Assembly: GCA_964106915.2 (NCBI GenBank)
Contig: OZ066921.1
Length of the DNA: 64,000 bases
Source: Podarcis gaigeae
Lineage: Eukaryota
Direction: 5' to 3' (one strand)
This document shows, piece by piece, positions 9,275 through 48,937 of the stretch (its first letter is position 1; the number at the start of each line of letters is the position of its first letter). The position numbers and the translations under genes are program-made. The notes beneath the pieces are model-generated. The model was not told the DNA's origin. It did not search any database and worked only from the letters and a program-made list of their open reading frames with translations.

Positions 9275-12200
9275 ATGGCGCTGAGGCCACAGGCAGCTCC
9301 CGGCTTAGCCCTGCTGCTCTGGGCCCTGTGCAGGACTGCTGTGCCTGTCACCACGCCTGAGGCTGTGCTAAGGGAGCACCAGGGACATTGCTACCAGCTT
9401 GCCCAGGAAAGATTGGCCTTTGAGGAAGCCCAGGCTGCCTGCGGCCGATGGGGAGGGCACTTGGCACAGGTCCCTTGGGAGGTGACAGGGACGTGGGGAG
9501 CTCTGAGAAGGAGGAGGGGGCAGCTGAGAGGGCCCTCTGGAGGCTGGTGGGTCTCCAAGGGCCCAACCAAGCCTACGGTGGCAGGTAAGTCAGTCCTGTG
9601 GGGGCACCAGAGAGGGCTGGGCAGAGGTGGGAAGTTGTTTCTACTCCAGAGGGTGGAGGGTGCGTCCTGGTTTCTATCACAAAGGCCAGGTCCCTTTACA
9701 CAGCTGACTTGGCTGTGGTTAAAGGCTGGGATTTGGGGAGCCACATTGAGGGGCAGGGTGTGGAGGTGGGGGGCACTGTGCTGCAGAGAGCTGGCTCTTT
9801 TGCTTGTAGTGTAGAATTCTGCTTATTTTCATCTGCTCTGTCAAGGGCATACCACCCCGCTCTGCCTACTGTGGTCAGATCTTACAAGAGGGCAAGGCCC
9901 TCACCTTGCCCTGCCCAGCTTGCCACCATGCCCATGGCAGCCTCTTGTGTCTTTGCCCAGGAGCCCAGCCTCATCTGCATGGGGCTCACCATCAGCCCCC
10001 CACCTGCACCTTCCTCTCCAACCTGGGCTTGCTGCAGGAGGCTACCGGGCCCACGTGCCGCCAGAGGCATCCTTTCATCTGCGAATTTGGTGAGAGGCCA
10101 GCTGGGCTGCCAGGGTGGGATTGTGACACTCCCACTCCACCCCACCCCTGAGGACAGAGATTGCTCCTCCTGACCCAGGAGGGGCTCCCTTTCAGGATGG
10201 TCCTTTTTGCAGGTCCTGTGGAGGGAGGTGAATGCCCAGTCAAAGTGGCCAGGAGTGCCAACAGCTCCAGGCCTTGGCAAAAACAGAAGGCTCAGCTGGT
10301 AGGTGATGGTGGCCGGTTCTCTTCCCTCCAAGTCCAAAGCAAATAGGCTTTCCCTCCTGCTGCCTGAAACCAAACTCCAGCAGATGCACCAAGGCAGAGG
10401 ATGGGGGGGCAATAAAAACAGCCTGTCTGCCACCTCTTAGCCACCCTCCAGACAATTCCTTTGGGCATGATTCCTGGGCAAGCTCCTAACAGGGAACCCT
10501 TTGCCCTGCCCCTTCCAAGAAAGCCTATTGGGTGACATATCCTACCTGGCACAGTGGCACTGCTCTGTCCCACTCTTTTTTCTCTGTCTGCCTCCAGGAT
10601 CTGACCTCCATGGGGCGGAGGCCACAAAGGCTCATGCGGCGGCATCTGGGTGATAAGCAGAAGTACCCAGGTGATGTGGGGATTTATTGATTTCTGAAAT
10701 AATGCATTGAAGAGTAGGTCATCTGCAATTATAAGCAATTGTGAGAGGCTGATCATCTTGGGTCATTCTGCTTATTTTAACAAACCCTTTAAATGCCCTA
10801 AAATAATATTTGTGGGGCTGAAAGGGGTATTTTATCTTATTTCTCATAGAGCATCTTTTCCAAAAGATTGTAGATGTCAGCACAACCAAAAGATATGCTT
10901 TCAATCTGCCTGTACAGAATTACAACTCCAACATTTACCAATGGTATTTGTTTAAGCTGTGCCCAAGGGGCAAGGCACCCGTGATTAACTGTTTTTAACA
11001 AGTTTTATTTCAGATAAACTTTTATTGCCATGTTCTACCTCTTCCATGGAAAGAGCCTGAAGCAATGCTCAGGATGAAAATAAGCAACTGTAATAATGTA
11101 AAAGCGCGAATATAACTAGTAGCCAGTGGTTCCCTTATCATGAGGCTGATCCTTTTGCCGGTCAGGGCAGTGGTTTTCCCCTGAAAGGAAGCAGCTTGTT
11201 GTTGAGACAGGCTCACCGCAAGGAGTTTGTGTTTATGGAGGCCAAAATGCCTGTTTCTCCCTGAGGGGAGAAAAGACTCTTGCTCATACTTCTCCTCTTG
11301 CCTCCAGAGACATCAGCAATCAGGGAGGCCTTGCAGGATGTTGTTCCCAGGACCTGGCAGCAGGTAAAAGAGCCCCACTGGGAGGGAGTATCTGGGGAGG
11401 GGACCCCCTTCAGCCCAGCCCCATTGAGGCCCACAGCAGAGCCACCAACCTTCCTCTGGCTCAAGACAGCCAACCTCTCTTCTGGTGGTTAGCACAGGCC
11501 TTATGTAGGCTGGGGATCCCTTATTCAGTGATCTGCATTTGCCTGCCAGCATTTGAGCCCAAACTCCTGATTCTGCCTGCAGGAGCTGCTCCAGCGACTG
11601 ACACTGCCGGTGAACAATGGTGCCTGGAGTGCCTCTGAGCTGGTATGATTGGGCCCATGGGGAGGGCGGATGCCCCAGAAGGGACTGAGCCCCAACTCCA
11701 AAGGCTATGTAGCTCCCATGGGGAACCTGAAGAAAGAGTCAGGCCAAGTCCTAAGAAGTTCTTTCCTCCAAGAGAGGTGATGGGGAACATCTCATGGAAG
11801 GAGTCGAGGGACCCCCATTAGTGCTGAGGGTCTTGGGCAATGCATGGGCATGGAGGAACATTAACATTACGTATGTGCCTTTGCGTGCCAGGAAGAGGAG
11901 GTGGGGTTTCTTCAGGCTGTCAGTGAGGACCTGCTGAAAAGGAGGCCTCCAGCCTCTCCACACTGGCACATCCTCAACCTCCTGGCAGTCCATGGCACCA
12001 GTCGGCTCCTGCAGGTCATTCTGGGCCCCTGCTCATCCAACGTCAACATCCAGGTGAGGATATGCCACACTCCTGGGTGCCCTGGTGGGGAGGACAGGCC
12101 GGTGCATGGGTCCCTTCATCCCATATTGCCCCATCTTGGATGGAGATTGAGTCCCCAGTAACTGCCCACTTATCCCTCCAGCAGCATGATGCCCTGACTG

Positions 12201-15200
12201 GCACCCTGATGCAGATCCTTCACAAGCTGGAGCAAGCTCTTCAGGAACTGGGGGGCAGCAGTGATGCCATCACCATGGAGACACCTCTCATCAGCATCTA
12301 TACACACAGGTAAGCTACCAAGCTTGCAGCCACTGGGTAACGGGGAAGGTAGGAAGCTTGACTGGTCTGGGAAGGGATGGGAGAAAGATCTTGGCAGGAA
12401 GTGTCCAGGGGAAAAGGCCTTGAGGTAGCCATCTGCCCTTCCCTCATCATGGCAGCTGGCTCACATTTGCCTGGCTGTCCTGCAGATTGGCAACTCTCCT
12501 GAGGCACCCTGATCCCAGGCACCATCTGCTGTGCCCTGGCTCTAACCCTAACTCTCTTTGTCTCCCTGGCTCAGGGTGAACTCTTCCAGGCTGGGCAATA
12601 TGGCGTTCTCCTTCCCTGGCAACCCATGGGCAGCCAGAGTCATTTTGCCAGAGCAGTCTGCGCTGGGCGCCGTCATGCCACAGAATATCCCAGTGGATGT
12701 GCAGGTCAGAGGGAGCAGGAGTGTGTGGCTGGCCCTCTCCTTTGGACTGGGCACAGGGGCCTTCCCTTTCCATGAAACGCAAACTCTCCTCTGCCATCTG
12801 CTGCTACCCCAGGAGGAGAAGGAAGGCAGAGAGCACCCAGGCAACGAGTCACTTGCTGTGCTGTGGAATGCACTGGGGCCCAGCACTCAGAAGTGACTTG
12901 GCTCCTTCAGATCAGCCTGATGACACACCCAGAGGCATCTTCCCTCCCTCCCTCTTCTGGAGCCTCATGCGTCTGGGTTGGACTCCAAACATTTCATGAC
13001 ACCCCCCTTGCCAACACCCCTGCAACCAAGGCCCCCTGACTTGGCCCTACTCAATCTACCTACCCAGTGATTCCAACAGTAAGCAGCCATGTTTCCAAAA
13101 ATGGGGAGCAGAGCGTGAGGGGGGGGGCGCCCAGCCATCCTGCCGAGTGTGGCCATGTGGCCGAGCAGGCATGGCTGGTGGGTCAGGCCCCCTCAGCAGT
13201 GGCGCTGCCCTTTCTTCTTCTCTCCCTCTCTCTTTAGATGGTGAGCTTCCTGGGCAGCCCCTTTCCCCCAAGCTCTGGGGAAGGGGTCACAGGAGCTGTA
13301 GCTGAACTGAACCTCCTTTCTGAGGGCAGCCAGATCAGCGTTAGCAACCTGAGCACCCCTGTCCAGGTATGTCCTGCCTAGAGACTTTGGGCTGAGTGGA
13401 GCCTTCCTCCCTGTAAGGGGGTGGGCTATTGAGCATCTCCAGAGGGCAAGGACAGCCCTCCAGGATCATTTCTCATGGCAGGATCTCATCGTGTGGAGAT
13501 CAGCTGGATCAGCCACCAGGTAGGCCAGCCGCTTAGCCTGGGAGAGCCTACAGTACAGGGTCTGGTCTCTCTGTCATCATCCTTCCCTCTCTCCCGCCGC
13601 AGCTCACCTCCATCAGTGAGGCTGCCTCTGCTCCGGGTGAGAGCCTGAGGCAGCTGTTCATCTCACTGTGGTGGTGCAGTAGCAGCCAGTGACATCCTGC
13701 TCTCTTTTCCCATCCCAGATTTTCCTGCCCCGGGTTGGGCCTACAGCCCCTGCCGAGCCAGCTGCCTTCCTCTCTCCAGGGGAGGCCCTCCTTCTGACTG
13801 CGAACGTGACATGGACAGGGGGATCCCTGATGATCCACGCTCACCTGGACCCTGTGGGGCCTCTGGAGCTCTTCCTGCAGCCAAGCGAGCAACTCCGGGA
13901 GCCCATTGAGCCCAACGTTGGCCTGGGTATAGCACGGGGACAGAAGAGCTGGCTTCTGTTTCCACTTTTGGCCTGGGGAGTGTGAGGACCTCTTCCTAAA
14001 ATGGTTTCCCTTTTGTGTTGCCCCCCCCCCCGCCGCCCCCATCTCCTGCAGATGGCTACACTTGGCTAGTGAAGGAGAAAGTTCTTCATGACCTGAGAGG
14101 AGCCATTCAGTTCCTGGTGGTGCCACTGAACCTCTCTGCCAGCCAGGGTCCTGCCACCTTACATGTCAGCACCTATGGGATCCAGTGCGTCTCCCGGCAC
14201 CTGCCTGATGCCCAGTGGCGAGAGGCAGGCTGCAAGGTGAGTCTTAGCGTTCAAGAAACAAAGGGAATCTGGGTACCTTGCGCCCCCTACTGCCAGAGGC
14301 AGGGAAGAATCAGAATAGCTGCCTCTGGTCCTTAATAACACTTCTATCCCATTTCAAGACCATACTGCCTGCTTCTTTATTTAAAGCATCTGGATCTCTG
14401 TTTTGTGAGAAATATCCAAGGTGATCTGCTGCCCAGAAGCGCCCTTAATCCCACCCTGTTTGCAGGTAGGAGAGAGCAGCAGCCTGGCGGAAGTCCACTG
14501 CCTCTGCACCCACCTCTCCTTCTTTGGCAGCAGCTTCTGGGTGGCGCCAGTCCAGCTGGATGTGGTGCGCACAGCAGAGTACTTTAGCCAGGTGAACAAG
14601 AACCCAGTTCTGGTCGCGGTCCTGGGAGTCGTCTATGCCCTCTACTTGGTGGGGGTGGCCTGGGCCCGCTGGTTGGACACACGCCCCCTGCAACAGGTAA
14701 GTTGCTGGGGGTGAGAGGGCCGGAGGTCAGGGGGGGGGCGGGTCTGGCAGCAAGCAGCACAAACTCACAGGCCCTTGGCAGCTCTTAAGTGGTGATGCTC
14801 TCAGAAGGGCAGGTCATGCAGCAACAGCCACCATTTGGAGGGTGTTATGTACTGAATTGAATAGGATCCAAACTGCAACAGTCTGATTGGTCCTAGAACA
14901 ATAGGATCCAAAAGGCAGCAGTCTGATTGGTCCTAGAACAATGCAGCAATATGATTGGTTGGCAGGAACCACCCAATCATGCTCCAGATAGAAGTGAATC
15001 CACAACCTGATTGGCTTACAGTAGAATTCCAGAATTAGCCAATAACGTGCAGCCCATTGTGTAAATAATGTATATAAAGCAGATACTTTGAGGGGACTTT
15101 CATTCATTCCTCCTCACCACTATGAGCTGAATAAAGAGCATGAAATCACTTTGCGACTCTGAGTATATTTCAGAGACTGAACTCTTGGAGGGTCTCCAGC

Positions 15201-18200
15201 GGCTCTCCCACGCCATGTGGAGAACAAAGGACTCTGGTCTCCTCACCCTCCACCCCTAAAGGGTGTGGCTGGCTAGGGGCGGGGAAGGCTTCTTATTTTC
15301 TACAAATGGTCATGACTGCATTTTGCTCTCTATAAACATACAGCGAGTGAGATGCAGCTAACTCTGTTCCATCTAACGATTCCATGTGGATTTATGGTTT
15401 GCACATCTCTTCGCCAGCAAAAGAGATCCCCTTATTCTGGTCTTCACTGGGGCCAAGTGGGAAGGACAACTGTATGTATGGGGCTTCAGCGCTCTCTGCT
15501 CTCCTGCGCTGCTCCATGGCAGAGCATGACCCTAGAAACGCCACCCCTCACACCCCTCTCCCTCTCCCAGGCAGGGCCAGTCCTCCTGTCCGATGATGAT
15601 CCCTGTGCCCAGTATGGCTACCTTCTCCAGATCTCCCTGCATGGGCAGCAGAAGGCCCCCGGAGGCAGCCCCTGTGTGAGTGGTCTGCCCTGAGTGATGG
15701 AGGGGGTGGGGTGCCTGGTCTTTGCCCCAGAGCTCACCCAGCCCTTTCATCTCCAGCAGGTCTGCATCTGCCTGCAGGGATCGTCTGGTGTCAGCAAGCC
15801 TCGGCGCCTGCCCCTGGATGCCAGCCTCTTCCTCCTACGGGAGCCATACCCACTGGGAGAGCTCCAGAGCGTTTGGTTGTGGCAGGAGCCCCACTCCGCC
15901 CCACAGCTGCCCTGGTCAGTCTGCCCAGAAGTAGGGTGGGCGGGTGACATCCCACTTGGAGACATTGTGCTGGCATGCGGGCACTGTCCACCTCCCATGG
16001 CTTGGCTCTGGGTGCCAGCCAGCCTCTGCTGGACATGCCACAATTCCCCCTCTCTCTGAATGGGGCAGAGGTGGTTATTGTGTCAGGGTGGCCATCCTCA
16101 GGCACCCTGAAGAGGTGGGGCTGGGGGCGGGTCAGCAGCACACCTGGCACCCGTCCAGCAGGGAAGCCTCCTGCCTCTGCCTGACAGGACCTTATTCTAA
16201 GTGGGGCACTAAGAGCACCAGCCTCCTGCCTGGCACTCATTACCCATCCCCTTCCCTCAGGCATATCGCCTACATCACAGTGCGAGACCTACAGCAAAGT
16301 AGGAGGTTCCATTTTTGTTGCCAGCCGTGGCACGTCCCAGCAGCAGGGGCCCCACACAGCACTGCCCAGCATTTCCTAGCAGCTCCACAGCACCAGCCAA
16401 CAGCATTCTGGTAGGCTTACCAAGAGACGGGGGAGTCTGTTTGGGTGTCCTCAGCCCCCACCTGCCCACTGTGCATGAACTTAGCAGGGATCTCCGAACC
16501 GCCTCCTCCCAGCCAGAGCTAGAGACTCCAGCTGTCTTCCTCCTCTGGCTCTCCCATAGCCTGGCCCACCCACCCATCTTCCGCTCTCTCTGCAGGCCCA
16601 TCTTCCGGCAAAGGACCCTGAACGGTCTTCGGGAGGAGCACACAGTGCTGACAGTGCTGCTGACCCGGACAGGCCACGGACGGCCCGTCACGCGGGTCCA
16701 GGGCCTCTCCTGCGGCTTCTGCCTCCTCCTCTGCTCTGCGCTTGTCAGCCTCATGTTCTGGGAGGTGCCCCACGAGTCACCCGAGCTCCTGAGTGTTGGT
16801 AAGGGTTGTGCCACATGGGATATCTCCCAAGGGCCACTGGCATGGAAAAGGGAGCTGTGCAACTCCTCTGCTCCAACTCCTGCCAGTGGAGGAAAGTCCC
16901 TCCTGCGGCTGCCACAACTGGAGGGACAAACACAGTCATACCCTTTGGGCCAGCAGGAGGGAGGTTCATGCATTGTATTAGGACTTCGGAAGAGCCTGGG
17001 TGCAGCTGGATCAGGCCAACTGTGGTGGGATCTAGCCTAGCATCATGCTTCTCACACAATGGCCACCCGATGCCTCCTGGGAAGCCCACAAGCAAGGCTC
17101 CTCTCCTACATTTGATCCCCTACCCCCTGAATCCGGGGGTATCCTGCCTCTGATTGTGCAGGTAGCAGTTGGTGCCTCCTTCCAGCGTCCATGGGGCACA
17201 AAGAGTGGCGACTGGTAGGTCCACTTGTAGGCACTTTCCCCCCCTGTTGATACACAGGCAGCTGCTTCTCCTTCTCCTGGAAGGACATCATGATCAGTGT
17301 GGAGAGTGCCTTGATTACCTTCCCCGTCAACTTGCTCCTTGTATTCATCTTCCGCCACGCTGAACCACGCAAGAGCCATGCAAAGCCTGGCCTGGCAACG
17401 GCTGTGCCAAGTGCCCCTGCCAGCCCAACAACCCTGGACACTGTGCATGAGGTAGGGACAAGAGCTCTCCAGGACCCAGGACATTTTCCCCATTGTGCCT
17501 CCCCTTGGAATAAGGCCACGGCTGAGCTGGCAGTGGAGAAGAACCCCCACCCGATCCCCGAAGCCCCACGTCCCCCAGGATCCTTCTTGCACCAGTGAAC
17601 TTGGTCCCAGGGAGACGTTTTTGCATTTGCAGATACAGCAAGCACTGGCTTGCCAGAGAGTTTTCTCTGTGGCAGTTATGGGATGGCTTTTAATAAGTAG
17701 GAGAGGATATGTTAATGGTAATTTATCCCTCCAGGTGCCCACATTTGTGGGTTGAACATACAAAGAGATCAGCTTATCGCTTCGTTTAAAACACAGGGCT
17801 GAGCAGAGTTCAAAGTCTCATCCTCAGCAGAAAAATAGAAAGCATAGGAAAAGGCTGTGAAGCATTCATTAAATTCAGTCCAGCAACAAAGCAAGCTGGT
17901 TGCCCCTTAACAAAGAACCAGACACAGACTGAGAAGTAAGTTTAAAATATGTTTACTTACTCATAGTCATGCAATTGTTCTCAGCAGCAACAGCAGTAAA
18001 ATAAATGCAGGCAAAATACTTATATTTACAGTATGAACAGCTTGAGGCATGTGGCCAATGCTGAAGCGATGGGATATATGTCTGTTCCATCACTGGCTGA
18101 AGAGAAAAGAGAGAGGGAAGGAACAGGAAATACTTTGATTCTTCATTTCCAAGAGAGGAGGGGAAATGACCTCACACAGAACCATCTCTACCAATTACAT

Positions 18201-20053
18201 TTCTATGATTCGAGTCTCTCTATCAATAATGTGACCCTATGGTCTTAACCCCTTCACATGCTAACTCACAAAAATATGCATTGTTAGATTTGGCTGCAAA
18301 TCTCCCACAGCACTTCTCCCATCTGCTACATCTTCTTGTGCCCAGCTTTGCCCACCTTACCCTCAGCCTGTTGGGTGCATTTGTGCCCCAGTCGCCTGCC
18401 CGTCTACCCGTGCTTGTCTTTCCCTCCCTAGAGCCTGCGTGGGGCAGTGGAGACGCTGAGCAAAGCCAGCAAGCAGAGCCAACAGCTGCTACATCCCGAC
18501 ATGGACCTTGAGGAGCTTCTGCAGTGGCTGGCTCGTTTTATCCACCCTGATCCTGGGGAGGAAGAGGAGGCAGCAGGTGAGAGCCCAGCCATGCCTGCCT
18601 GCCTGCCTTGGGCAGCCCTGCTAGACCCCCAGAGGATGGTGACGGCTGCGGCTTCTGCTTGCAGGGAGGGAGCCCAAGATCTCCAGTGTGGCACCCAGCC
18701 CTGATGCGCTGCACCAGACCTACTGCAACCGCTACCTCCTCCTGAAGCTGCGGCACATCTCCCGTCTCCTGGGGGAGCTGGAACCAGGAGTCCCGACAGC
18801 CAAGCACCCTCCGGCTCTGCAGCAGCGTGTGGAGGAGATGGCCAGACGTCTTGAGCTAGCAAGCCCCATCCGGTCTCGCTCCATGTAGGTAGCTCAGACA
18901 GGCTCTGTGAGCAGGCAGGGAAGCCTACCTTGCAGAGCCTCTTCCTCATGCCTTCCTCTTGTTCCTCCACAGCCGAAGGTGGCACTTGCCCTGGTGGGGC
19001 GCCTGGGTGGGGTGGGCCCTGCTGGTCTCCCTCAGCGCAGTGGCTACCTTCTTCTCCTTGCTCTATGGCTTCCACTATGGCAAGGAGAGCACCGAACGCT
19101 GGCTCATCTCCACTGCCATCTCCATGGGCCAGGCCCTCTTCGTCCTGCAGCCCCTCAAGGTACTTCCCAGCCAGGCTGAGCAAACCCAGCATTCCAGGGG
19201 GGCCTTCTCACGGGAGGTCGGGTTGCCAGACCTCTAAGTCTGATCTAAAGTCTTCAGGTTTGCCTAGTACCCTCCAGGTGGCAGGTGAAGGGCTGAATCG
19301 CTAGATGGGTGAGAGTTCCAGTGGTGTGTGTGTGTGTACACAGAAGACCGTGTATAGAGGGTGCACACTTTGGACCAGCAGGAGCTGGATGCAAATTATA
19401 GCATAGACACGCTGGAGGACTACCTCCACTCTTCTCCTAATTAACCTCTGTCTCTAGGACCCTTGTGACTATACCAGGGTCTGTGCCCCTGACACCACCA
19501 GGGGCAGCCCCTAGGTCTCAGGTTTGGGCCCTGAAATCTCAGGGTCTGTGATACTCCTCATCTGGCAACCCGTAGGGGAAGGGACATCTCAGCAGCAGCA
19601 GAAATCATGGTGCACATACTTCTTCCTCATCTCATGTATGTGTCTGCCACCTGCCTGGCTGGGACAGGTGTCTGGCATTGGAGCACTGCAAACACCCACT
19701 GCATCTCCTCTCTTCCTCCCATGAATTTCAAGGGGGTGGGGGAGAATTTAACCAAAGCACCCTCACACATACACCAGTTTGTTGTGGTGTTTTGGCACAA
19801 AGTGAGGGGCTTGGCTCATCTGGAGAAAGGGAAGCCTAAAGATGCTCCCTCTGTTTTATGGATGGGGGGAGATGCTCCCTCTGTTTTATGGATGGGGGGA
19901 GATGCTCCCTCTGTTTTATGGATGCGGATCCTGCCCATCCTTCTTCTTCCATGAAACCCAATGCAGGTGATAAGCTTTGCCATTTTCTGTGCCCTGATAC
20001 TGAAGAAAGCAGAGGATGAAGATGAGGCAGCCCTGGACCTGGAAGAGCGGTAA
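9275..20053 (+). CDS. Truncated polycystin-1-like protein (PKD1L2/PKD1L3-family paralog): SP, C-type lectin, GAIN/GPS, TM1, degenerate PLAT, TM2-5; no channel domain; ~1102 aa
   Basis: 22 GT-AG exons forming one 3309-nt ORF: 9275-9584, 9961-10089, 10213-10298, 10598-10670, 11308-11363, 11583-11642, 11916-12053, 12182-12309, 12575-12704, 13238-13366, 13719-13926, 14052-14236, 14466-14696, 15571-15675, 15760-15914, 16261-16410, 16596-16798, 17258-17451, 18432-18576, 18665-18884, 18973-19159, 19967-20053. Motifs: MALRPQAAPGLALLLWALC signal peptide; CYQL..AFEEAQAAC..WGGHLA and C..HPFICEF lectin; WREAGCKV..HCLCTHLSFF GPS; TRVQGLSC; LPWW..LYG..QPLKV; ends LILKKAEDEDEAALDLEER*. The small exons 3-6 are the least certain. 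Confidence 0.85.
14843..15172 (+). mobile_element. Solo LTR in an intron of the truncated PKD1-like gene
   Basis: TG...CA ends (TGTTAT...ATTTCA), repeated CTGATTGG (CCAAT) boxes, TATATAAA at ~15071, AATAAA at ~15130; TSD not clean. Confidence 0.6.
19841..19924. repeat. 30-bp tandem repeat, ~2.8 copies
   Basis: GATGCTCCCTCTGTTTTATGGATGGGGGGA repeated just upstream of the last exon of the truncated gene. Confidence 0.9.
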
Positions 20054-22351
20054 AGGGAGGAAGGAGGCTTGCAGAAGTGGAAAGGCAGGATGAATTGAAG
20101 GAGGGAAGGGGAAAGGGGCCTCTCCAGAGAGGGTGGGGACCTGGACTGCCTCCAAGTAGAGAAGGGCAAAGGTGGCACTGAGAATGTCCCGCACCAACTG
20201 CAGAAAACAAACTCAAGTTCAAAAAATTCCTTTCAAGACAGGGGCCAGGCAAGAGGAAGGGTTTTCAGTACTACGTCTGTTCCCTCTTCCTCCTCCCGTA
20301 AGGGAAGGTTATGCACACACAGAGAAGAATCACGCCTCTCCACTTTGGATCGGCATGACTAGGAGCCCACCTGGACCATTCCTCTGCTGCTTTGGGTGGC
20401 CCGGCAAGGCATGCAGGCTTGGTGGAGGAATCCAGTTGCTGGTGTGGGCACCTCTGGTTGCCAAGAGCAGGTAGCCCAGGGCCTGCTCTGGGAGAGGCAG
20501 AGGATGCAGAGAGGCTACACTAGGCATCTCCTGGGATTGCTAAACAGGAAGGAAACACATTGAACTGGAGCCCCTGCAAGGGCAGGACTGGGACTGTCCC
20601 CTGTGGAAGGGGAGAAGACTAAAAGGTGGTGACTGGCATGTGCACAGTGGGGGTGGAGAGGAGTCACCACCCAGTGGCAGAGCAGCTGCTTTGCAGGCAG
20701 AAGGCCCCCTGCCTTCCTAACTCTTGACACTCCCCGTTAAAAAGATCTCGAGTAGTCTCTTTGCTCGTGGCCTTGAAACGCCACTGCCAGTCAGACTAGA
20801 GCAGACATATTAGGTTACCAGTAATTTAACCATCCTAAGGGAGACTGCAGCTCCAGGACTGGGGCCAAGGGAGCAGAAAATATGCTGGGAAGCAGTCCTA
20901 GGGCCCCATCCTGACCCATGTCTTCGACCTCTGTGATTGCAGGCTGTGCTCTTTCCAGTGATGGGAGGACAACTTTCTGCGAGGCCACCTTGGCTTTTGC
21001 CATGCCATGTGCCCAAGACCTCCAATCAGCCTCTCCAACATGATGTCACCCACACCTGTACAAAGGCCAGGACCATCTCTCTGGAGGAACGGGAGGGCAC
21101 AGCATGGGAGGGGGACAGCGAAGTCCCATTCTGTAACCTGCCAATGGAGCCAACCCTGAACTCACTGAGTGTTGAAAGAGTTGGGATGCAACTCAGCTTG
21201 CTGAGGGTTTGCATGAGGTTAAATTGGATAGAGAAGGGAACCTCCAAGATTGCCTAACTGCCCTTTGATCTCTGTGATGACCTTTCCTTTACTATTAGAC
21301 TGATATTCTTAGGGTTCCTGACAGTGACCAAACTTCCTGCTTCCCCCTCTTCCTTCTGAAGCTGAAGGAGAGAGGACATCAATGGATGTATCTCTGCCGA
21401 GAGTAAAGAGCAAGCATAACTCCCTTGCAGCTTTAAGATTAATTAGCTAAAACTAGTAACTCTTTTCTATCCAAGTATATATTTCTTATAATAAAGCTTT
21501 ATTATATTCCAATTTTAAGTACTCTGTGTGTGATTGCAATGAAGACAAGCCTCCTCTCCCCAGTAAGAGGTCTATGTGAGGTCAGCTTCCAAGCTGTGTG
21601 CTATCTTGCAAAGTGATTCAACACTAGGCATGGCCCACACCGAATAAATGGCAGGCTACAGGTCAGTGGTGTCCGTGGAAGCTCTCTTTCACTCTCTGAG
21701 GACATCATAATTGGTTGTTCAGGGCCCCAGGCACAGATCCAGACACCCATTCCCAATTCAAGCCCCCTGGTGGCCCCCTGGCAGTGACATGCAGTAAATT
21801 GTAAAACCTCATGTGGCTGGCTGGAGACTCGCCAGCACTTGTCCAGAAGTATCATAGAACTGTAGTTTTGGAAGGGACCGTGAGGGTCATCTACTCCTAC
21901 CTCCTGAGGAATCCCACTAGCACAACCTCCCTGGAAGGAGGGTCCCTTCGCCTCCGCTTAGAAACCTCTAATGAAGGGGAGTCTGCCACCTTCCTGTCTG
22001 CCCCATTCCCAAACCCCTTGAAATCCCATTTCTTGTCACCCAAACTGCTTGGTTATCATACTGTTCTCTGGAGCAAGAAGAATGGGATGTGCCTCCTGGG
22101 CTCTCAACATTTGCCTGCCAACGTGCCTTTTATCCAGCAGACAATGCAGTTGCTCCTCCTTTCTTCCCCGTCGGGGTGCAGACAATGGCATCCTCTTCTT
22201 TGCAAACAAGAGCGCCCATCTCCAGCTGGAGCGCCAGGTGCTGCACCTGTTCAGCCTCTGGGTGTGGCGCTGCTCTGCTCCTCTTTTCAGCAGCTCCCCC
22301 ACCTGCTTTCTCAGTTCGTGGGTTGAGCGTGCACGGTGTGTGTGTGTGGGG

Positions 22352-22372
22352 GGGGCGGTTTAGACTATTAAA
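22352..22372 (+). promoter_or_regulatory. Candidate PKD1L3 core promoter (GC box plus TATA-like element)
   Basis: GGGGCGG at 22352-22358 and TATTAAA at 22366-22372, ~40 nt upstream of ATG 22412. Confidence 0.4.
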
Positions 22373-22411
22373 GCGTGGCCCCGGGCCAGCTTGCTCCAAA
22401 GAGGGAGCGGC

Positions 22412-25400
22412 ATGGGTCTCCCTATAGGGATGTGGCTCTGGCTCTGGGCCGCACAGGTCTCTTCGGAGGAATCGGAGCCCGCCTGCCTGCCCGTGGCAGG
22501 AGAGGACTGCTATCGGCTGCTCCGGTGGCCACAAGCCGCCTTGGGTGCAGTGATTTGGTGCGGACGATCCCACGGCCGGCTCCTCCACACGTGGAACCAG
22601 CAGATCCAGGACGCCCTGCGCGACCGCCTGGACGACAGGAGCAAAACCTGGATCGGGGCTGCAGCAAAGGCGCTCCCAGAAGTGAGCCACCCTGGCAAAG
22701 GTGAGAGCGGGGCGGGGGCGCAGAGGCCCAACAGCAGCACCGCAGAAGAGGGGCAGCAGCAGCCAATTCCAGTATACTCTCCCAGGATGTGTGTTATTCC
22801 CCACTCAGCATCTCTGACTCGCCCAGACGCCAAACCCCTCAGGGCAAGACCGCCACCCTCCCTACACAAGGTGGGACCACCGTCTCCTCGTGGGGATCGA
22901 GGCGGGGCAGCCAAGCTTCTCGCTTCAAGGGCCCAGCCAGGCCCTGCAGACCCTTCCCTCCGTCGAGGGACCCCGCCCACCAGCGTTTCAAGGACACCCA
23001 GGGTGGCAGCCATCCTCCCATGCCAAGCCCTGCTGCTGATGGCTCAGCTCTGCAGTCTGTGACAGGCAGTCAAGGAGTGGGGAGGGTTAAAAATAATAAT
23101 AATAATGCAAGGCTACCAGGCACTCACCCTATGTAAAGGCTCCCCTTAAACCACTTGCCACCACTGGGAGGCTCTAGTCTGGAGAGGGAGCGGAGCCCTA
23201 CAGGGGGCGCTCAGGGCAGCCTCAGCCGGAAAGCCTTATCCTAAGAAAATCCCCCAAAGGCAAACAACTGGCGGGCTGGTGCTGAGTGTGGGGTGGCGGG
23301 GAAGAGGAGTAACCGTGCCTGACGGCGGCGCCTACTCTCCGCAGACCACTGCAAAGTCCTCGTCCGGAATGGGGACCAATTCTATACCAGGAGGGAGGAG
23401 TGTGACCAGAAGCACTTTTTCATCTGCCAGTCTGGTGCGTGAGTCTGCCCGCCCACCGGGGTGGGAGTTCGTGCCCTCATTCCGCACCCACAGGGGCTTG
23501 GGCAGGGGCCTCCAGCTTCAAAGAGCGAGAAGGACCTCGTGGCTGAGCTGAGGATGAGACTCTCTGGACGGCCCCCCACGAAGCACGCCCTTTCGAGGTG
23601 GCTGCAACCCCGGAGGCAGGGCCAGGGCCAGGCTCTCCCCAGGCGGCTGGGCTGGGCCGTCGCAGGTCCTAGAACCGGCTCCTGCCGCCCAGGAAGCGCC
23701 CCTTCCATGAATTCTCCCGAGCTCAACCCCTTCTGCTCTCTGTCTGCTACAGGCCCCCCAAGGACGCCCCGAGAGACTTCCACGCCCTGGGTGGTAAGTT
23801 CCCGCCAAAGCAAGTGCCTGCGCAGCCGTCGAACAGGAACCGGCGAAGGCTCTCTAGGCCGTCGCCGCTGCGCAGCGCCCCCTGGACTGACTGCGGCGCA
23901 CCGCCGAGCAGCTGGCCCTGGTGACTTTCTCTCCCTGTCTCCCAGAGAACGACCTGCCAGCATTTGAGGTGCGGCCCGACGGAGGCGACGCCCATCCTCA
24001 CCGAAGAGCCGACAGCGACTGCTCCTCTGAGCGCCCAGGCCTCCGCCGCGACTCCTCCGCCGCCCAGTGCTCCTCCAGGAAGCAGCACAGTTCGCCAGCC
24101 GACCACCGCTGACATCCAGTCATTCCTTGGGACCAGGCCAGAACTCAGCACTCCCCGCCATTCGCCGAGCACCCCCAAGTGGGCATCCAGCACGTGGCCC
24201 ACCAGCAACAGCAACCAGACCCGCCCCAACTCTCAGACCTCAGCCCCAGAGCCCAGCACTCAGCCGCTGCCCACCAGCAAAACCACCTCGGGGGGTACCA
24301 AAAGCCACGAGTCCAACACCAGCCCAGACGCCTTCACCTTCAACCCTAGAGACTTCTCCCCTGAGGACCAGGGGAAGGTAGGGAGACATCTGGACTGGCA
24401 CCTGCCCCTACCCTGGTGGCACCTTGTCCAGACAGGCTCTTCTCTCTCTCCGTCCCATACCCCACACCCTGCTCCAGAGATATCAGGAGGCATGGGGGGG
24501 GGGGCGTTGCGGCGTTGCAGGATTCTTCCTTTGCACCTGGAAAAACCAACGCTGAAGTGCAGATCAAAGATGCGTGTGACTTGTATATGATTTCCCAGGG
24601 ATCCAAAGTCACTTAGTGAGGGATTTCCAGACTGGTTTTGCCCACTGCAGAAAGGGGGGCAAGTGGCTATGGGGAAGCGTGGGGGGGATGTGTGGCTCCC
24701 TCCAGCCTAGCTGCCTTCTCAGGTCTTCCCCCTATAGGGTAGAGGAGCCTTCCCAGAGTTAGAGATTTAGCGACAAGCTCCACTTGCAGACTCACTGACA
24801 GCGTAATAGGGCAACCAGGCCCCCTTCTCCCCCAGCCCCTCTCACTCAGGGTCTGTCCCACAGGCCCTAGAGAAGGTGCTGCACCAGTTCAGCCAGGCTG
24901 TGCAGACCCCAGACCACCCTATGGCACTGGAGCAGGCAGCCCGGATGCTGGAGAATTTGACAAATTTCCATGCTCTGCTCTCAGATGATGCCCAGGTACT
25001 GGCATGTGGCAGGGAGGGAGGGAGGGTGGGTGGCTGGCACCCCTGATCTAAGGGTCTGTCCCCTGCGGCCTATTCTCCCAGTCCTTGGTTGAACCAGGCT
25101 CTACCCAGGCTATGTACAGAGGCAAGCCTGCTGCTTGGCACAGCCAGCCTCGCCCTTGCACCCCCAAATCAGCCCCGCCAGATGATCAGCCCTGCCTTGT
25201 TCCTACAGGCCTCTGCCAGCCAGGCACTCCTCTCCCTGAGCTCTCAGCTACTGAGGGACCACCCTGCCAGCAATGCCTCCTGCCTAGACCTCGCATCACA
25301 GGCTCTTTTCCAGGCCCTCAGCAACCTCCTCCAAGCCTCAGGCAGCCAGACACCCAGCTTCGGCCCGCAACAGGTGGGGAAGAAAGAGGACCTGCAGGGG

Positions 25401-28400
25401 TCGGGTGGAGAAGGCTATTCAGAAGGATGGGGTTGCCAGCTCAGGCCTGCTGCATGGCTGGGTCTCATTCTGAAGGCACCCCCTTTTGTCCAGGCCTTCC
25501 CATTGCTCTGAGCCCATGGGAAGGGAGCTGAGCTTCCCAGCTCCCCACCCTGGCTCTGCCCAGCTCCTGACCACATCTGGCCTTTCTGCAGCAGGAACCA
25601 AAGGTCCTGGAAACAGCACTGAAAGCCCTTCCTCTGATCCAGACGGGGCTCCTGTTGGGAAGCTCCACCATGGAGGAATCCACAGTAACTGTGGTGTCTC
25701 CTGTGCTCAGCACCACCCTCAGCAGGTACCAGTCTCCTCTCTCCTAGGCACTGAAGAAGTGGGGGGGAGCTTGCTCAGGGCAACTGAATGAATTGTTTGG
25801 TTGCCAATTACCTATTATAATCCTTTTGGTACGCAGAGTAAGACATTGTTCAGATAATGCATCTTGGTTAGGGAACAGACTTTTATGAGTTACAATCTCA
25901 CACACAGGGATGTTTGTAGTTAAGATAAATGATAAAGGAGTCTATTACATGATTTTTAAAATTATTACTACATTTATAACCCACTTTTTCTCCAAAAAGC
26001 TCAGGATGGCTCACAGTTGTCTCCTTTTCTCCATTTTATTCTCATAACAACAACCCTGAGAGGTGGGTTGGGGCTGAGAGATAGTGACTGGCCCAAAGTC
26101 ACCCATTGGGTTTCATGGCTGAGAGGGGATTTGAACCCTGGTCTCCCACGTCCATGTCTTGCACTCTAACCACATAATTGGATAGAAAAGTTCCAAGTTC
26201 CAGCCTAACAAGTCTGTACTAGAGCATGGTAGCCATTCTGGCTCCTATTTTATCTCAGAGGATAATTCTTCTTGGAGAGAGAAATGTGAGAGGAGCAGGA
26301 AGTTGTGAAACAGACTGCAGCCTGAGAATATCAAAAGAGATAGAGAGGTGAGCTGAAGAAGTTAATGACACAAAGGTAGTCTGGGAGTCTGGAGGTCTCG
26401 AACTCTGTTCTATCTGTCCTAACCTACGCAAGACCCCTCTTCTGAAAATGGAGTTGCACTCAAACTTTCAACAGTAACCCCTCTCCCCACTCCCTACCAG
26501 GTGTGACAAAGCCTCCCTGTCCCATGCCTCCTTCCACCTGCTTCAGCCAAGGGGCCTGAACGTAACCTTCCCATCCAGCTCTGCTCTGGAGCCAGTTCTG
26601 AGCCAGCACCCTCAACTACAAGTCCAGGTAAGGTGGTAGTGGCTTGCTGCCCACTGGGTCCTAGGGAGACATAGTGCAGGGCTGGCAGGGCGTGGAGGTG
26701 GGGCAGAGGGCACCCCCACAGCTCGCTCTTGCTCTCATCTTCACTCTAGGTGGCCTCCTTTGCATTCAACCCTTTCCAGCACCTGGATGGGAAGCCGATC
26801 AAAAGGATGGCAAGTATCGCTCTCATGGCCAGCGAGGAGTCCATCGGTGTCCACAATCTTGCAGAGGAAATAGAGGTGAGAATGGATACTGTACTGGAAA
26901 GTTCTCTCATCAGGGGGACTCTTCTCTCTGCACCCAAGTGGCACGGAGAAGCAGCGCTGTCCAAGGTCCAGCGCTGGATCAGAGGTAAGCACTTTGTGCT
27001 GTATGGCCTGATGGGAGACAGTATGTGCTCAAGGGCCAGTGGGGGGCACTTCAGGGCTGACCATGGACATGCTGTCTGCTTCCAGATTGGGCTCAGTGCT
27101 GAGGCTAGTGCTGAGGCCCCTCACACTCACTTGACTGGCAACGTCAGGAACTTTGACATTGTGGTAAACATCACGTCAGTAGAGGATGCCCTGCTAGTAT
27201 TGGTGGAATCCAGCACAGTGGTCCAGATCACCTTGCACCTGGGCCTCCAACCTGAGCCCAACAAGAACAGCAGCCTCCTCAACACCACCCTGCCCAGCAG
27301 CGGATGGCAAGAGGGTGAGGACTTGTTAGAAGGAAGCTAGAGGGCAGGTGCTGCTTTGGGACTTCCTATTGGAGCATCTGATTGTCATCTAGGAGAATAG
27401 TGCTGGACCAGAATGGTCATTGGCCTGATGTAGCAGGTTCTTCTTATGCTCATACATACAACACACTGCTGCATGTATCCCCTTAAAAGTGAGTCTCATT
27501 GGAGTTCAGTGAAGTAACTCTCGGGTAAGTGGGCATAGCTTTGAGGTGTTAACTTCACCAACTGTTCTGGGTTTCAGCCATAAGACATGACCTATATGGC
27601 AGGCTTCCTCAAACTCGGCCCTCCAAATGTTTTGAGACTACAATTCCCATCGTCTCTGACCACTGGTCCTGCTAGCTAGGGATCATGGGAGTTGTAGGCC
27701 AAAAACATCTGGAGGGCCAAGTTTGAGGAAGCCTGCTATATGGGAACAATTTACCTCTATAAATAAAAAGGGAAAGTTGCAAAAGTATACAGATTGAATC
27801 AGCTGTGTTTCAATTATTTAATTTCCCATTAAATTCATTTAATTGCAAATTAACATGGTGTAGTGGTCAGATTTGCACTGTAGGAAACATCAATGGGAAA
27901 TTTGTTTTAAATCGCTTAGTTAAATCAGCCCGTTTCTTCATTTACATAATTGACCAAACCACTTTGATTTAAATCTGTGCACCTGGAAGTAAGCACAGAG
28001 GGAGGGGCTTGAGGAGCTGGGGCCAGGCAGGACTGTGTCCCCAGTGGGGGAATGTGTGGGTGAGGTCAGTGGGTGTGGTCCCTCTCTGCTCTCTTTGACT
28101 CACTGCTCTTGCTTCAGAGGGTACCTACACATGGGTGATTCCTCCAGAGGAGCTGCAGCATCATGGCCTGGGCACCTACTACATCTCTGCAGAGGTGGCT
28201 CCCCTCTCTCAGGGCCCCTGGAACCTCTCCATTCACACCATCATCTCCGGATGCTACTACTGGTCCAGCCAGCATCAGGCCTGGAGAACTGATGGATGTC
28301 GGGTATGCAGTAGGGTCAACCAGGCCAGAGGGCTGTTGGGCAGGCAAGCAAGCCTTTGCTTCCATGCTGGGAGGAAAAAAAAGTAGGGCAGAATGTCATG

Positions 28401-31400
28401 GGGAACCAAATGGAGCAGAACTTTGGGGACCTCATCCTCCTGTGTTGGTTTCTAATGCATCAGTGCCTCCCTCCCAGGTGGGCTCCCAAAGCACCCTCCA
28501 TAGCACCCAGTGCTTGTGCAACCACCTCACCTTCTTTGGGTGCATCGCCTTGGTCCTGCCACACCTGATTGACCTTCACAACACTGCAAAGCTCCTGAGC
28601 ACTGTGGGCCAGAACCCTTCCGGGCTGGCCTTGCTAAGCAGCTTGTTGCTGGGCTATGGAGTTGCCCTTGTTTGGGCTCGATGGAGACAGAGAACGGATG
28701 TTAAGAAGGTGAGGGGAAAGGGCAAGCAAAAGATTTATGATGGTTGTTTGGGGTTATTAGCATTTGCAGGCCAGAGACACTCCCCCCATCTGCCCTCATT
28801 CAGGCCATTCTTGTCTGATGTGCTGAAATGAGGAACAATGAGATATTTATCCAGCAAACAGCTGAGAGCCAGACACCCTGGAAAAGCCGACTTGCTGAAG
28901 TGGGGCTTGGCCATTTCTAGGGCCACCCACCCCATGTGTGTCTCTCCCCCTTCCAGGTGAAGGTCACAATCCTAGCAGATAATGAGGCCACCGCCTGCTT
29001 CCCTTACCTGATCCAAGTCTTCACAGGCTACCGCCGAGGGGCTGGGACCTCTGCTAAGGTAGGGGAGGGTCTCACTTTCCTGCAGGCCCACTTTGTACTG
29101 TTGATGCTACAAGTGCTGCCCATCAAGTTCCGTGACCTCAGGCTCCTGCCCACAGAATCTGGGCCGAGTCTGGCAGATCTCTCCCTATCGGGGAGTGGGT
29201 GTGTGGGGTGCAGGCTTCTGTGTGACTGGCTGCATGGAAAAGCCTGTCTTTGATGACATCCTTCATGTGCTCCCTGCTTGGGCAAGGAACTGAGGAAAGG
29301 AAGCAATCAATGAACCCCACCCAGCACCCACCCTCTTTTCCCTTTCCTTGATTAACCCCTTCTCCCTCCTTGGCTTGAGGTTATCCTGACCCTCTATGGG
29401 GCAGAGGGCCGGAGTGAGCCACACCTGCTACAACACCCCCAGGGGCCCTCCTTTGAGCGAGGTGGGCGGGATGCCTTCCTCCTTGCCACTCAGAAGTCCC
29501 TGGGCAACCTCCACGCCATCCGCCTCTGGCACGACAACACTGGGCCCAACCCCAGCTGGTAAGTCCATGGCCCAGCAAGGGCTGAGGGTGGGGGCCGAGA
29601 GGGTGGGGTTAGAGTGAACCAGACTGCAACCGGATGCCAGGCAAGGAGGAGGTTGGAAGCACACGACTGGCGTGGGAGAGTCCGTTGGCAGCACCAGACC
29701 TTATCAGATGCTAGTAGGCAAAGGGACACTGCAGCTGGCATACCTAGTCCTCCCATGCCATGGGGTTGTGCTGCCAGGACCTGGATACATGCAGAATTCC
29801 CAGGTCCTCAAAGATACCTCCTTTCAAGCCTATGCTGAAGAAATTCACAACATCCCTGTCCAACTGTAGCAAAACTAGCTGCAGGTCAGTTGGACATTTC
29901 AGGGGGACGATGGAACTGTGGCATGTCTTGTCCCACCCAAGGCTTATGCTCACCATATTAAAGGCCAGCTTTGGCTCCAGAGGCCACATTGTCATGTAAA
30001 ATAATGCATTATGACCCACCTTTGGTCTGAACCCCCAAACATAAAGGATACATCAGGGAGGGAATACCTTTCCATCTCCAGTCTTTTCCCAAAGCTTCTG
30101 GGCAAACGACGCTTTATGTATAGGTTAACTTGGAGCAAAGCTTCCCTTGTGCTTGAAGGAAGCCACATGCAGCTCTCTGCTTTGGCAAGGTGATGAGGGC
30201 AGAAGGAAAAGATCCCCACTGCTTCCCTTTAACCTGCAGCTCTTGAGTGATGGGGGGCAGATCCCTTGGCTGCAGCTAATGGGCACCACATGACTACTTG
30301 GCAGTGCCACCCATGTGTGGGCAAATGACTGAAAGGCCTGAGCCTCCTGCAGGTTTGTGAGGCGGCTGGTTGTCTGTGATCTGCCTGCCAAGAAGAAGTG
30401 GCATTTCCTGTGTGACTCTTGGCTGGCAGCTGACCTGGATGACGGCCATGTGGATAAAGTCTTTGCTGCTGCCTCCGAGAGGGATCTCCTGTCCTTCAGG
30501 TAAATATGAGCCCCACCCACCCACCACCTGCCAGTTTGTGGCATCTCTGGAATGTGTTTCTGCCCCTGATTTACCCAACAGGTACCTTGCCTTTGACTGA
30601 ATTATGCTAAGAACACCTGTGTGAAAAAGCAATAATCAGACATCAAAAAATAAAAGTCAGGGAACGGCAGGCTCTGACCCAGAATCTGCTTGGAATGACG
30701 AATCTCAGACCCAGTGCAGAAAGTTCCTTTGACTATACACAGAGAGGGCCTTTCTCTCCCACCCATCTGGGAGTTGGGTCTTCCTTCCAGGTCAGAGAGT
30801 GTGATGCAGCTTCCAGCTCCTCTCCATTCAGAAATTAGGTGCAGCAGGAAAGGTCCCACCCTGCTCCTGGCCCTTGACCCTCTCTGGCTCAGCCCCTACC
30901 AAATACATCTCTTACCCCACTTCACCAGGTACCAGTTCTGGTCAGGGCTGGTGGACAAATTGACGCAGGAGCACCTGTGGCTGTCGGTGGTGACCTGCTC
31001 GCCCTGGAGCCCCTTCACCCGTGTGCAGAGGCTCTCCTGCTGCCTGGCCCTCCTCTGCTGCACCTTCCTCATCAACATCATGTTCTGGAGAAAAGAGGCA
31101 GCGTCCAGAAGCCCCGAGGCTGGTGAGTCAGCTGCCAGCTGGAGACTAGCATAGCCAGTGCCTTTCCTTGTCCCCCACCCCAACATGATGCAGGTGGGTG
31201 CTAGGCTGGGGGCAGGTGAGTGGGTGGGGTAGGGAAGAGGCTGGTTTCCCACCACTTGCCATGGCTCACAGCCCCCAAGGCAGAGCCCTAAAGAGTCCTG
31301 TATTTTTGCTCCTGTCCCCATGCTCCACCTTCCATGCATAGGGCTTGTATGTCTTTAAGTAGCGCTGAGGATTCTAAGCTTCACAGTGGAGCTGGGAGTC

Positions 31401-46540: not shown

Positions 46541-47039
46541 GGTAAATTGGAGCCGGGGGGGGGGGGGAGAGATCTGTTCTCTTGTTGCTACCTGCTGAAC
46601 ATCTTTTGGAGAGGCAGACAGTGAATGGTCTCAGATCTCAGGTTCTGGATTGGTTTGAATGTGGAAAGGTTGTGAGCTGTAATGTTTTATCTCCGCTGCA
46701 AATATATAATAAAGCAAACAAGCAAATATAAGTAATTTTAATGTGAATTTTTGTATACAGCAAGAATAAATGTTTGAATAGACTATAAATGCCAGCCATT
46801 TTTAAACAGAGCCCATACAGATTCAAGTGTGTGTAATAGTACAGTATGCTAAAACCTATTTATCCACTTAAGAAATGCTTTGTGTGTATGTGTCTTTATC
46901 TGTATGTATGTGTAGAGCACTTTCATCTGTGCAAGCAACAGATTTCTGGTTTTCCCCCCTTTTGTACATGATTTGATCAGCCAGGCCCAACCATATACAG
47001 CACAAGGGGCAGCTCACAACCTTGGATCTCTTTAACCAG

Positions 47040-48930: not shown

Positions 48931-48937
48931 GGGAACC

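What the first reader, a model, noticed from the sequence alone, without database searches (positions are those of the whole stretch)
9275..20053. Channel-less polycystin-1-family gene in tandem upstream of PKD1L3
Seen: 22 exons with canonical splice sites join into one uninterrupted ~1102-aa ORF. It carries a signal peptide, C-type lectin, GAIN/GPS, TM1, PLAT and TM2-5, then stops after a short acidic tail (LKKAEDEDEAALDLEER*). I found no TOP/S1-S6 exons in the 2.3 kb before the PKD1L3 start. Known: PKD1, PKD1L1-3 and PKDREJ have 11 TMs and use the last six to form 1:3 heterotetramers with TRPP subunits; mammals have only PKD1L3 at this position. Inference: this may be an undescribed 5-TM, adhesion-receptor-like polycystin that cannot contribute a pore. 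It could act as a stand-alone lectin sensor, a shed ectodomain, or a modulator of the neighbouring PKD1L3/PKD2L1 channel.
Basis: partly seen in the sequence, partly recalled or inferred. Interest (0 to 1): 0.9.

Follow-up and report, generated by a model that had tools for sequence, protein, structure and literature searches.

The report
Ancient channel-less polycystin beside PKD1L3
This lizard gene encodes the sensing half of a polycystin-1-type protein without its ion-channel half, and fish, amphibians and lizards have kept it intact for over 400 million years, so it is an overlooked gene of its own rather than the decaying PKD1L3 it was taken for in fish.

Summary
Real, intact gene in a Podarcis-type lizard. 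One correction: there are 23 exons, not 22. A donor at 20049 joins a short terminal exon (20943-20961), giving 1114 aa ending LCSFQ, with a poly(A) signal at 21490. No channel exons or gaps lie before PKD1L3. Zootoca keeps all 23 exons without indels (dN/dS 0.31-0.38). Of 106 fetched relatives (lizards, frogs, newts, caecilians, bichirs, sturgeons, gar, bowfin, teleosts), 94 end within 50 aa of TM5; frog and fish Logan contigs show the spliced, stopped ORF. They form one clade (100/99), close to but separate from PKD1L3, although databases call them PKD1L2. Fish members match the 'partial pkd1l3' that England et al. 2017 read as a gene being lost. Here it sits in tandem with full PKD1L3 in lizards, a frog and bowfin, so it is a separate paralog older than the ray-fin/lobe-fin split, absent at this locus in a turtle and broken in a gecko. 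It keeps the GPS site, stalk and a furin-type site; the lectin fold lacks sugar-binding motifs. Likeliest role (inferred): cleavable sensor acting in trans on polycystin channels. No lizard RNA could be tested. No earlier scan note on it was found.

The parts
9275..9584 (+). exon 1: ATG, signal peptide, first half of C-type-lectin-like domain
9961..10089 (+). exon 2: second half of lectin-like domain
10213..10298 (+). exon 3: linker
10598..10670 (+). exon 4: linker with minimal furin-type R-X-X-R site (10628-10639); strict R-X-K/R-R in 35 of 50 family members
11308..11363 (+). exon 5
11583..11642 (+). exon 6
11892..12053 (+). exon 7: helical GAIN subdomain A
12185..12309 (+). exon 8: GAIN
12575..12704 (+). 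exon 9: GAIN
13238..13366 (+). exon 10: GAIN
13719..13926 (+). exon 11: GAIN
14052..14236 (+). exon 12: GAIN, start of GPS motif
14466..14696 (+). exon 13: GPS cleavage site H-L|S (14511-14519), stalk peptide, TM1
15571..15675 (+). exon 14: PLAT
15760..15914 (+). exon 15: PLAT (the conserved FERG loop is deleted in lizards)
16261..16410 (+). exon 16: PLAT end
16596..16798 (+). exon 17: TM2
17258..17451 (+). exon 18: TM3
18432..18576 (+). exon 19: helical cytosolic loop
18665..18884 (+). exon 20: helical cytosolic loop
18973..19159 (+). exon 21: TM4 and first part of TM5
21490..21495 (+). probable poly(A) signal AATAAA, same distance from the stop in Zootoca
   Evidence: use in vivo not tested
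22412..39003 (+). neighbouring full-length 11-TM PKD1L3 (tandem paralog; 26% identical to the channel-less protein over the shared part)

Best explanation
What it is (about 0.9): a separate polycystin-1-family gene. It arose by tandem duplication in the PKD1L3 lineage before ray-finned and lobe-finned fishes split, and lost the whole TRP-like half (S1-S6, TOP, pore, coiled-coil/G-protein tail) once, when a short new terminal exon replaced everything after TM5. It has been kept under purifying selection since. How it works (about 0.45, inferred): it is a cleavable sensor module without its own effector. Furin-type processing frees the N-terminal lectin-fold domain. GAIN autoproteolysis at H-L|S leaves a stalk peptide on a 5-TM/PLAT membrane anchor. 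Ligand or force on the ectodomain exposes the stalk, and the protein acts in trans on a polycystin channel complex in the same membrane (an 11-TM PKD1-type subunit plus PKD2/PKD2L1), docking through its conserved TM2-5 bundle much as the same bundle sits beside the channel half within polycystin-1. Shown here: architecture, truncation point, conservation, selection, phylogeny, retained cleavage motifs. Inferred: that cleavage occurs, the partner, the ligand, the tissue.
For: Intact 23-exon frame, no indels against Zootoca where ~32 would be expected at the intron rate; dN/dS 0.31-0.38, p<1e-7. 94 of 106 fetched family proteins are channel-less and end within 50 aa of TM5; the five with a channel are models fused to the next gene. 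Intronless frog and fish Logan contigs carry the ORF, stop and 3' UTR with AATAAA. One clade from bichir to lizard, 100/99; AU rejects a lizard-specific duplication (p 2e-45) and 'fish gene = pro-ortholog of tetrapod PKD1L3' (p 0.0035). Tandem with a channel-bearing gene in bowfin, and with a second long gene in spadefoot frog. 11 of 13 introns sit at the same aligned position and phase as in PKD1L3. The frog model aligns with polycystin-1 residues 3065-3623 only (Z 19.9, rmsd 2.8 A, 214 residues) and with adhesion-GPCR GAIN domains. GPS H-L|S/T and a stalk like that of PC1 are kept across the family. Strict furin motif in 35 of 50 against 3.7% in shuffles. TM4-5 is more conserved than in PKD1L3 (lizard-frog 56% against 38%). 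Literature: free PC1 stalk peptide activates stalkless PC1/PC2 from outside but not PC2 alone (PMC12513491); the channel half works without TM1-5 (PMC8357825); PC1 is naturally cut between TM5 and S1 (PMC9672506).
Against: No expression, localisation or binding data. It lacks the TOP domain and C-tail that PC1 stalk signalling needs in cis, and no trans-acting polycystin N-half is known. The lizard branch is long (0.93), its PLAT domain has lost the FERG loop and is not significantly constrained (dN/dS 0.55-0.68), and the lacertid furin site is only minimal, so lizard function may be reduced or changed. The gene is broken in a gecko and absent at this locus in a turtle.
Confidence: 0.5

Rival explanations
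1. Stand-alone adhesion-type receptor or source of a shed ligand. The 5-TM part is an anchor or scaffold that signals through PLAT, the helical TM3-4 loop or the short tail, and the cleaved lectin-fold/GAIN ectodomain does the work, with no direct tie to a polycystin channel (as for the 1-TM sea-urchin SpREJ1).
For: Two conserved cleavage motifs. Kept in teleosts that lack full PKD1L3 (PMC5318412). Amphibian tails often end in a PDZ-type E-T/S-x-L motif and tail length is fixed near 43 aa in fish and amphibians. Channel-less polycystin relatives act as receptors in sea urchin (PMC1934368).
Against: A bare anchor would not need five conserved helices; TM2-5 are the most conserved part. The tail motif is not kept in lizards. 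No G-protein-binding tail.
Confidence: 0.3
2. Decoy or trafficking regulator: it competes with 11-TM polycystins for ligand, PLAT partners or ciliary entry and so dampens channel output.
For: Truncated paralogs of receptors often act as decoys (general knowledge); the ectodomain and PLAT are homologous to those of the neighbour.
Against: Only 26% identical to PKD1L3, so shared ligands are uncertain; the lizard PLAT is degenerate; it persists where PKD1L3 is gone.
Confidence: 0.1
3. The exons are mainly an alternative N-terminal half of PKD1L3: read-through transcripts splice exon 21 (phase 0) to the homologous PKD1L3 exon at 33838 and make an 11-TM chimera.
For: The splice would be in frame; fused database models exist for bowfin, Phrynocephalus and Pelobates cultripes.
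Against: Own terminal exon, stop and poly(A) signal conserved in lacertids; frog and fish contigs end in a 3' UTR; teleosts have no downstream channel exons (PMC5318412); the fused models contain two N-halves or skip a whole second gene, as gene-prediction errors do.
Confidence: 0.07
4. A decaying duplicate or assembly artefact (the England et al. 2017 reading for fish; the reader's own refutation case).
For: Real losses exist (gecko remnant, turtle absence); long lizard branch.
Against: No N, collinear with Zootoca across the gap; dN/dS well below 1 and no indels; same truncation point in about 90 proteins across bony vertebrates.
Confidence: 0.03

Closest known systems
Teleost and gar 'putative partial pkd1l3' (England et al. 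2017, PMC5318412; zebrafish ENSDARG00000091803, 1083 aa)
   Same: Lectin-GPS-PLAT order, no channel domain, similar length, next to dhodh; a gar and many teleost proteins of this type fall in one clade with the lizard protein.
   Different: [quoted passage not shown] Here it co-exists with full PKD1L3 in lizards and bowfin and is under purifying selection. The zebrafish sequence itself was not retrieved, so orthology rests on gar and other teleosts plus synteny.
PKD1L3 (polycystin-1-like 3)
   Same: Nearest named paralog; same N-half architecture without REJ/SUEL, shared intron positions, tandem neighbour, post-lectin furin motif in several members.
   Different: PKD1L3 has 11 TMs, TOP and pore and forms 1:3 channels with PKD2L1; this protein stops after TM5 and is only 26% identical.
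PKD1L2 (the name databases give it)
   Same: TM4-5 and acidic juxtamembrane stretch look PKD1L2-like (65% frog to frog).
   Different: No REJ, no SUEL lectin, no channel; different locus; the tree puts it with PKD1L3 and the shark/ray genes (99/99), with A+PKD1L2 only marginally rejected (AU p 0.046).
Chondrichthyan pkd1L4.1/pkd1L4.2 (PMC11979771)
   Same: Probably the ray and sawfish genes that branch with this clade and PKD1L3; one sits next to DHODH in sawfish.
   Different: Those proteins are full 11-TM with channel domain; order of branching among the three groups is unresolved.
Adhesion GPCRs
   Same: GAIN fold, H-L|S/T autoproteolysis site, stalk peptide, N-terminal adhesion-type domain, furin site.
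   Different: 5-TM polycystin bundle with PLAT instead of a 7-TM GPCR; no evidence of G-protein coupling.
Sea-urchin SpREJ1, 2, 8, 9 (PMC1934368)
   Same: Polycystin-1-family proteins without a channel half that act or may act as receptors.
   Different: 1-2 TMs, REJ domain, echinoderm-specific; not the 5-TM N-terminal bundle.

Membership tests
Polycystin-1 family (PKD1-like) | GAIN domain with GPS motif before TM1 | tested here: met
   H-L|S at 14511-14519; Pfam GPS in orthologs; GAIN fold match
Polycystin-1 family (PKD1-like) | PLAT domain after TM1 | tested here: met
   Pfam PLAT above cut-off in frog and tarpon orthologs, below cut-off and partly deleted in lizards
Polycystin-1 family (PKD1-like) | TM1-TM5 N-terminal membrane bundle | tested here: met
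   hydropathy; frog model aligns to PC1 3065-3623, Z 19.9
Polycystin-1 family (PKD1-like) | S1-S6 TRP-like half with TOP domain and pore (11 TMs in all) | tested here: not met
   no remnant downstream in five genomes; no Pfam channel hit; terminal exon and stop
Polycystin-1 family (PKD1-like) | 1:3 heterotetramer with a TRPP subunit | not testable with these tools
   needs co-IP or cryo-EM; the half that forms it is absent
PKD1L2 orthologs | groups with PKD1L2 in the tree | tested here: not met
   groups with PKD1L3 and ray genes 99/99; AU p 0.046 for A+PKD1L2, a marginal rejection
PKD1L2 orthologs | SUEL lectin and REJ domains, channel domain | tested here: not met
   absent from precomputed and fresh Pfam hits
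PKD1L3 orthologs | one clade with tetrapod PKD1L3 to the exclusion of paralogs | tested here: not met
   separate 100/99 clade; true PKD1L3 lies beside it; AU p 2e-45 and 0.0035
Fish 'partial pkd1l3' of England et al. 2017 | lectin-GPS-PLAT, about 1080-1130 aa, no channel domain | tested here: met
Fish 'partial pkd1l3' of England et al. 2017 | adjacent to DHODH | tested here: inconclusive
   met in sterlet, frogs, agamid and gecko remnant; no DHODH in the 9.3 kb upstream in this window or 10 kb in Zootoca
Fish 'partial pkd1l3' of England et al. 2017 | direct match to the zebrafish protein | not tested
   zebrafish sequence was not among the hits; gar and other teleosts were used
Adhesion GPCR | GAIN autoproteolysis site and stalk | tested here: met
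   motif level only; cleavage itself not tested
Adhesion GPCR | 7-TM GPCR fold | tested here: not met
   five helices matching the PC1 N-terminal bundle
Ca2+-dependent C-type lectin | C-type-lectin fold | tested here: met
   Zootoca domain model, pLDDT 77, all top matches are CTLDs, best Z 11.6
Ca2+-dependent C-type lectin | EPN/QPD and WND sugar/Ca2+ motifs | tested here: not met
   0 of 31 aligned domains

The most novel reading that the evidence does not exclude
Bony vertebrates carry a naturally split polycystin: a dedicated 5-TM sensor half that docks in trans on polycystin/TRPP channels and gates them through a cleaved stalk, i.e. an unrecognised class of auxiliary subunit for polycystin channels, present and testable in zebrafish and Xenopus and lost in mammals.
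Probability: 0.35. Interest if true: 0.85.

Novelty: new variant of a known kind. Interest (0 to 1): 0.66.

Why it matters
What the TM1-5/PLAT half of polycystin-1 does is an open question in polycystic kidney disease biology: the channel half works without it in oocytes (PMC8357825). This gene is a natural experiment in which that half has been kept on its own for more than 400 million years, and it exists in zebrafish-type teleosts and Xenopus, where it can be knocked out and co-expressed. It also corrects the vertebrate catalogue: the fish 'partial pkd1l3' is not a dying PKD1L3, and about a hundred database entries named PKD1L2 belong to a different gene, which can mislead expression studies.

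Tried and rejected
A candidate exon at 12911-13078 was dropped (in-frame stop, not needed for phase). Pfam on single exons gave only sub-threshold GPS and PLAT hits. The joined window model was built only inside scripts and never sent to a search tool; searches used single exons by reference or tool-returned protein ids. The 53-row mixture-model tree did not finish (quick tree only); a 28-row LG+G4 tree was used for bootstraps and AU tests. The order among this clade, PKD1L3 and the ray genes is unresolved. The Sceloporus locus was not on record; frog and reedfish loci came without DNA. I could not place the Phrynocephalus terminal exon. Snakes, monitors, skinks, birds, crocodilians, coelacanth and lungfish were not checked at DNA level; their absence from hit lists is not proof. 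Ten literature searches found no paper naming this paralog beyond England et al. 2017; closed journals are not covered. One script returned no answer and was rerun.
Full report
Observation. The window contains no N. I rebuilt the gene by hand from the sequence. Twenty-two exons from 9275 to 20053 have GT-AG sites and join into one stop-free frame of 1109 aa. Hydropathy gives a signal peptide and segments for TM1 (599-617), TM2, TM3, TM4 and TM5. Annotated lacertid proteins all end in five further residues, and these are encoded by an exon at 20943-20961 behind a good acceptor; the corrected protein has 1114 aa and ends LCSFQ, with AATAAA at 21490. The downstream gene (22412-39003) is a complete PKD1L3 with a channel half and is only 26% identical over the shared region. 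Its channel half and four others find nothing between the two genes. The window is collinear with Zootoca across the interval, so a collapse is unlikely. Identity of 96-97% to Podarcis proteins points to a Podarcis wall lizard (inference).

Selection. Zootoca vivipara has all 23 exons at identical lengths with conserved splice sites and the same end. Pairwise dN/dS is 0.31-0.38 (95% interval 0.21-0.53, p below 1e-7). There are no coding indels where about 32 would be expected at the intron rate. The GPS-TM1-PLAT part alone is not significantly constrained (0.55-0.68).

Distribution. An exon-21 search and three protein searches returned the same kind of protein from lacertids, iguanians, agamids, frogs, newts, caecilians, bichirs, sturgeons, gar and many teleosts, almost all named PKD1L2 by pipelines. 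Of 106 fetched proteins of this type, 94 have no channel similarity and end within 50 aa of the TM5 proline. Five carry a channel and are fusions with the next gene; seven are partial or odd models. Tail length is about 43 aa in fish and amphibians and 33-37 in lizards. Two Logan contigs, one frog-like and one teleost-like, hold the intronless ORF, its stop and a 3' UTR with AATAAA; I take them for transcripts, tissue unknown. Gene order is DHODH, this gene, then a 1836-aa gene 3 kb on in Pelobates fuscus, and the same in Phrynocephalus. In bowfin the annotated model is a fusion: the DNA holds the channel-less gene (2130-about 15810) and then a second, channel-bearing polycystin (19260-34560) before IST1. 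Sterlet has DHODH, this gene, and the start of a second lectin-bearing gene. In a turtle DHODH lies 1.8 kb from PKD1L3 with no trace of it; the leopard gecko has a remnant with stops and frame changes. In sawfish the gene next to DHODH is a full 11-TM protein.

Phylogeny. On the GAIN-to-TM5 stretch the channel-less proteins form one clade (quick 53-row tree 100; careful 28-row tree 100/99) that splits into ray-finned and tetrapod halves. PKD1L3 with the second bowfin gene is another clade (95/97). Both group with ray and sawfish genes (99/99) apart from PKD1L2. AU tests reject a lizard-specific duplication (p 2e-45) and a tree in which tetrapod copies and tetrapod PKD1L3 arose after the split from fish (p 0.0035); union with PKD1L2 is only marginally rejected (p 0.046). 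Whether the duplication came before or after the shark split is open. Eleven of 13 introns match PKD1L3 in position and phase. In bowfin and sterlet the intron after the TM5 exon keeps phase 1, as in PKD1L3, and in bowfin it leads to a short terminal exon. The simplest history is one duplication and one truncation before the ray-fin/lobe-fin split (over 400 million years by standard dates, from my own knowledge), then loss of PKD1L3 in teleosts and of the short gene in several amniote lines. The lizard stem branch is long (0.93), and lizards have deleted the FERG loop of PLAT.

Anatomy. An AlphaFold model of the frog ortholog (pLDDT 75, pTM 0.44) matches polycystin-1 residues 3065-3623 (Z 19.9, rmsd 2.8 A), adhesion-GPCR GAIN domains, PLAT domains and C-type-lectin domains. 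The Zootoca N-terminal domain folds as a C-type-lectin domain, but none of 31 aligned domains has EPN/QPD or WND, so Ca2+-dependent sugar binding is unlikely. The GPS site H-L|S/T and a PC1-like stalk are kept throughout. A strict furin motif follows the lectin fold in 35 of 50 members (3.7% in shuffles); lacertids keep only a minimal form, and several PKD1L3 share the motif. TM2-5 are the best conserved parts, more so than in PKD1L3.

Mechanism. The protein has the input side of a polycystin and none of the output side. In PC1 the exposed stalk acts on the channel half, and a free stalk peptide works from outside on stalkless PC1/PC2 but not on PC2 alone (PMC12513491). The channel half of PKD1L3 works without TM1-5 (PMC8357825), and PC1 is naturally cut between TM5 and S1 (PMC9672506). 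I therefore think it most likely acts in trans as a cleavable sensor for a polycystin channel complex (about 0.45). A stand-alone receptor or shed-ligand role is the main rival (0.3), then decoy (0.1) and read-through chimera (0.07). All of this step is inference. The partner cannot always be PKD1L3, since teleosts lack it.

Prior knowledge and verdict. England et al. 2017 described the fish and gar copies as a partial pkd1l3 being lost and set them aside. The catshark paper names full-length shark duplicates pkd1L4 and notes how poorly this group is understood. I found no paper that treats the channel-less gene as a separate conserved paralog. It fails the defining channel test of the PKD1 family, so I file it as a new variant derived from that family, not as a PKD1L2 or PKD1L3. 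Interest 0.66.

Noticed in passing
L002:2130-34560 (bowfin): The GenBank model P0022 fuses two tandem genes (channel-less gene N-half plus the second gene's channel half). The second, PKD1L3-like gene has an in-frame stop in a PLAT exon near 27585, next to an N gap, so it may be a pseudogene or a sequence error. It shows that a channel-bearing PKD1L3-like gene existed in ray-finned fishes.
   Followed up: partly
L008:3355-5789 (leopard gecko): Unannotated broken remnant of the channel-less gene between DHODH and PKD1L3, with stops and frame changes.
   Followed up: partly
L003:10001-76071 (sawfish): Full 11-TM polycystin next to DHODH and a second one tail-to-tail on the other strand; probably the pkd1L4.1/4.2 pair of PMC11979771.
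   Followed up: partly
window:1-9274 and L006:1-10000: No DHODH upstream in either lacertid, whereas agamid, gecko, turtle, frog, sturgeon and sawfish have it close by; an earlier scan note places NFAT5 about 21 kb before the window. Suggests a lacertid rearrangement or long insertion just upstream of the gene.
   Followed up: partly
L001:193-4739: One frog Logan contig holds spliced DHODH (minus) and the spliced channel-less ORF (plus) head to head, 164 bases apart: overlapping 5' ends from a shared promoter, or an assembly join.
   Followed up: no
window:14841-15172: About 330-base insertion in intron 13 absent from Zootoca, with internal repeats and AATAAA; looks like a solo LTR.
   Followed up: no
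window:36789-36962: PKD1L3 appears to use a GC-AG intron here.
   Followed up: no
amphibian orthologs (P0009, P0162, P0163, P0175): C-termini often end in a class I PDZ-type motif (E-T/S-x-L/F) that lizards and most fish lack.
   Followed up: no
window:40000-52600: IST1 (minus strand) and a ZNF821-like gene (plus strand) follow PKD1L3, head to head around a CpG island at about 46800-49000, as in mammals (read by eye).
   Followed up: no
P0002, P0005, P0160, P0161: Database models of Phrynocephalus and Pelobates cultripes that fuse the channel-less gene with PKD1L3 into one protein with two N-halves; likely prediction errors.
   Followed up: partly
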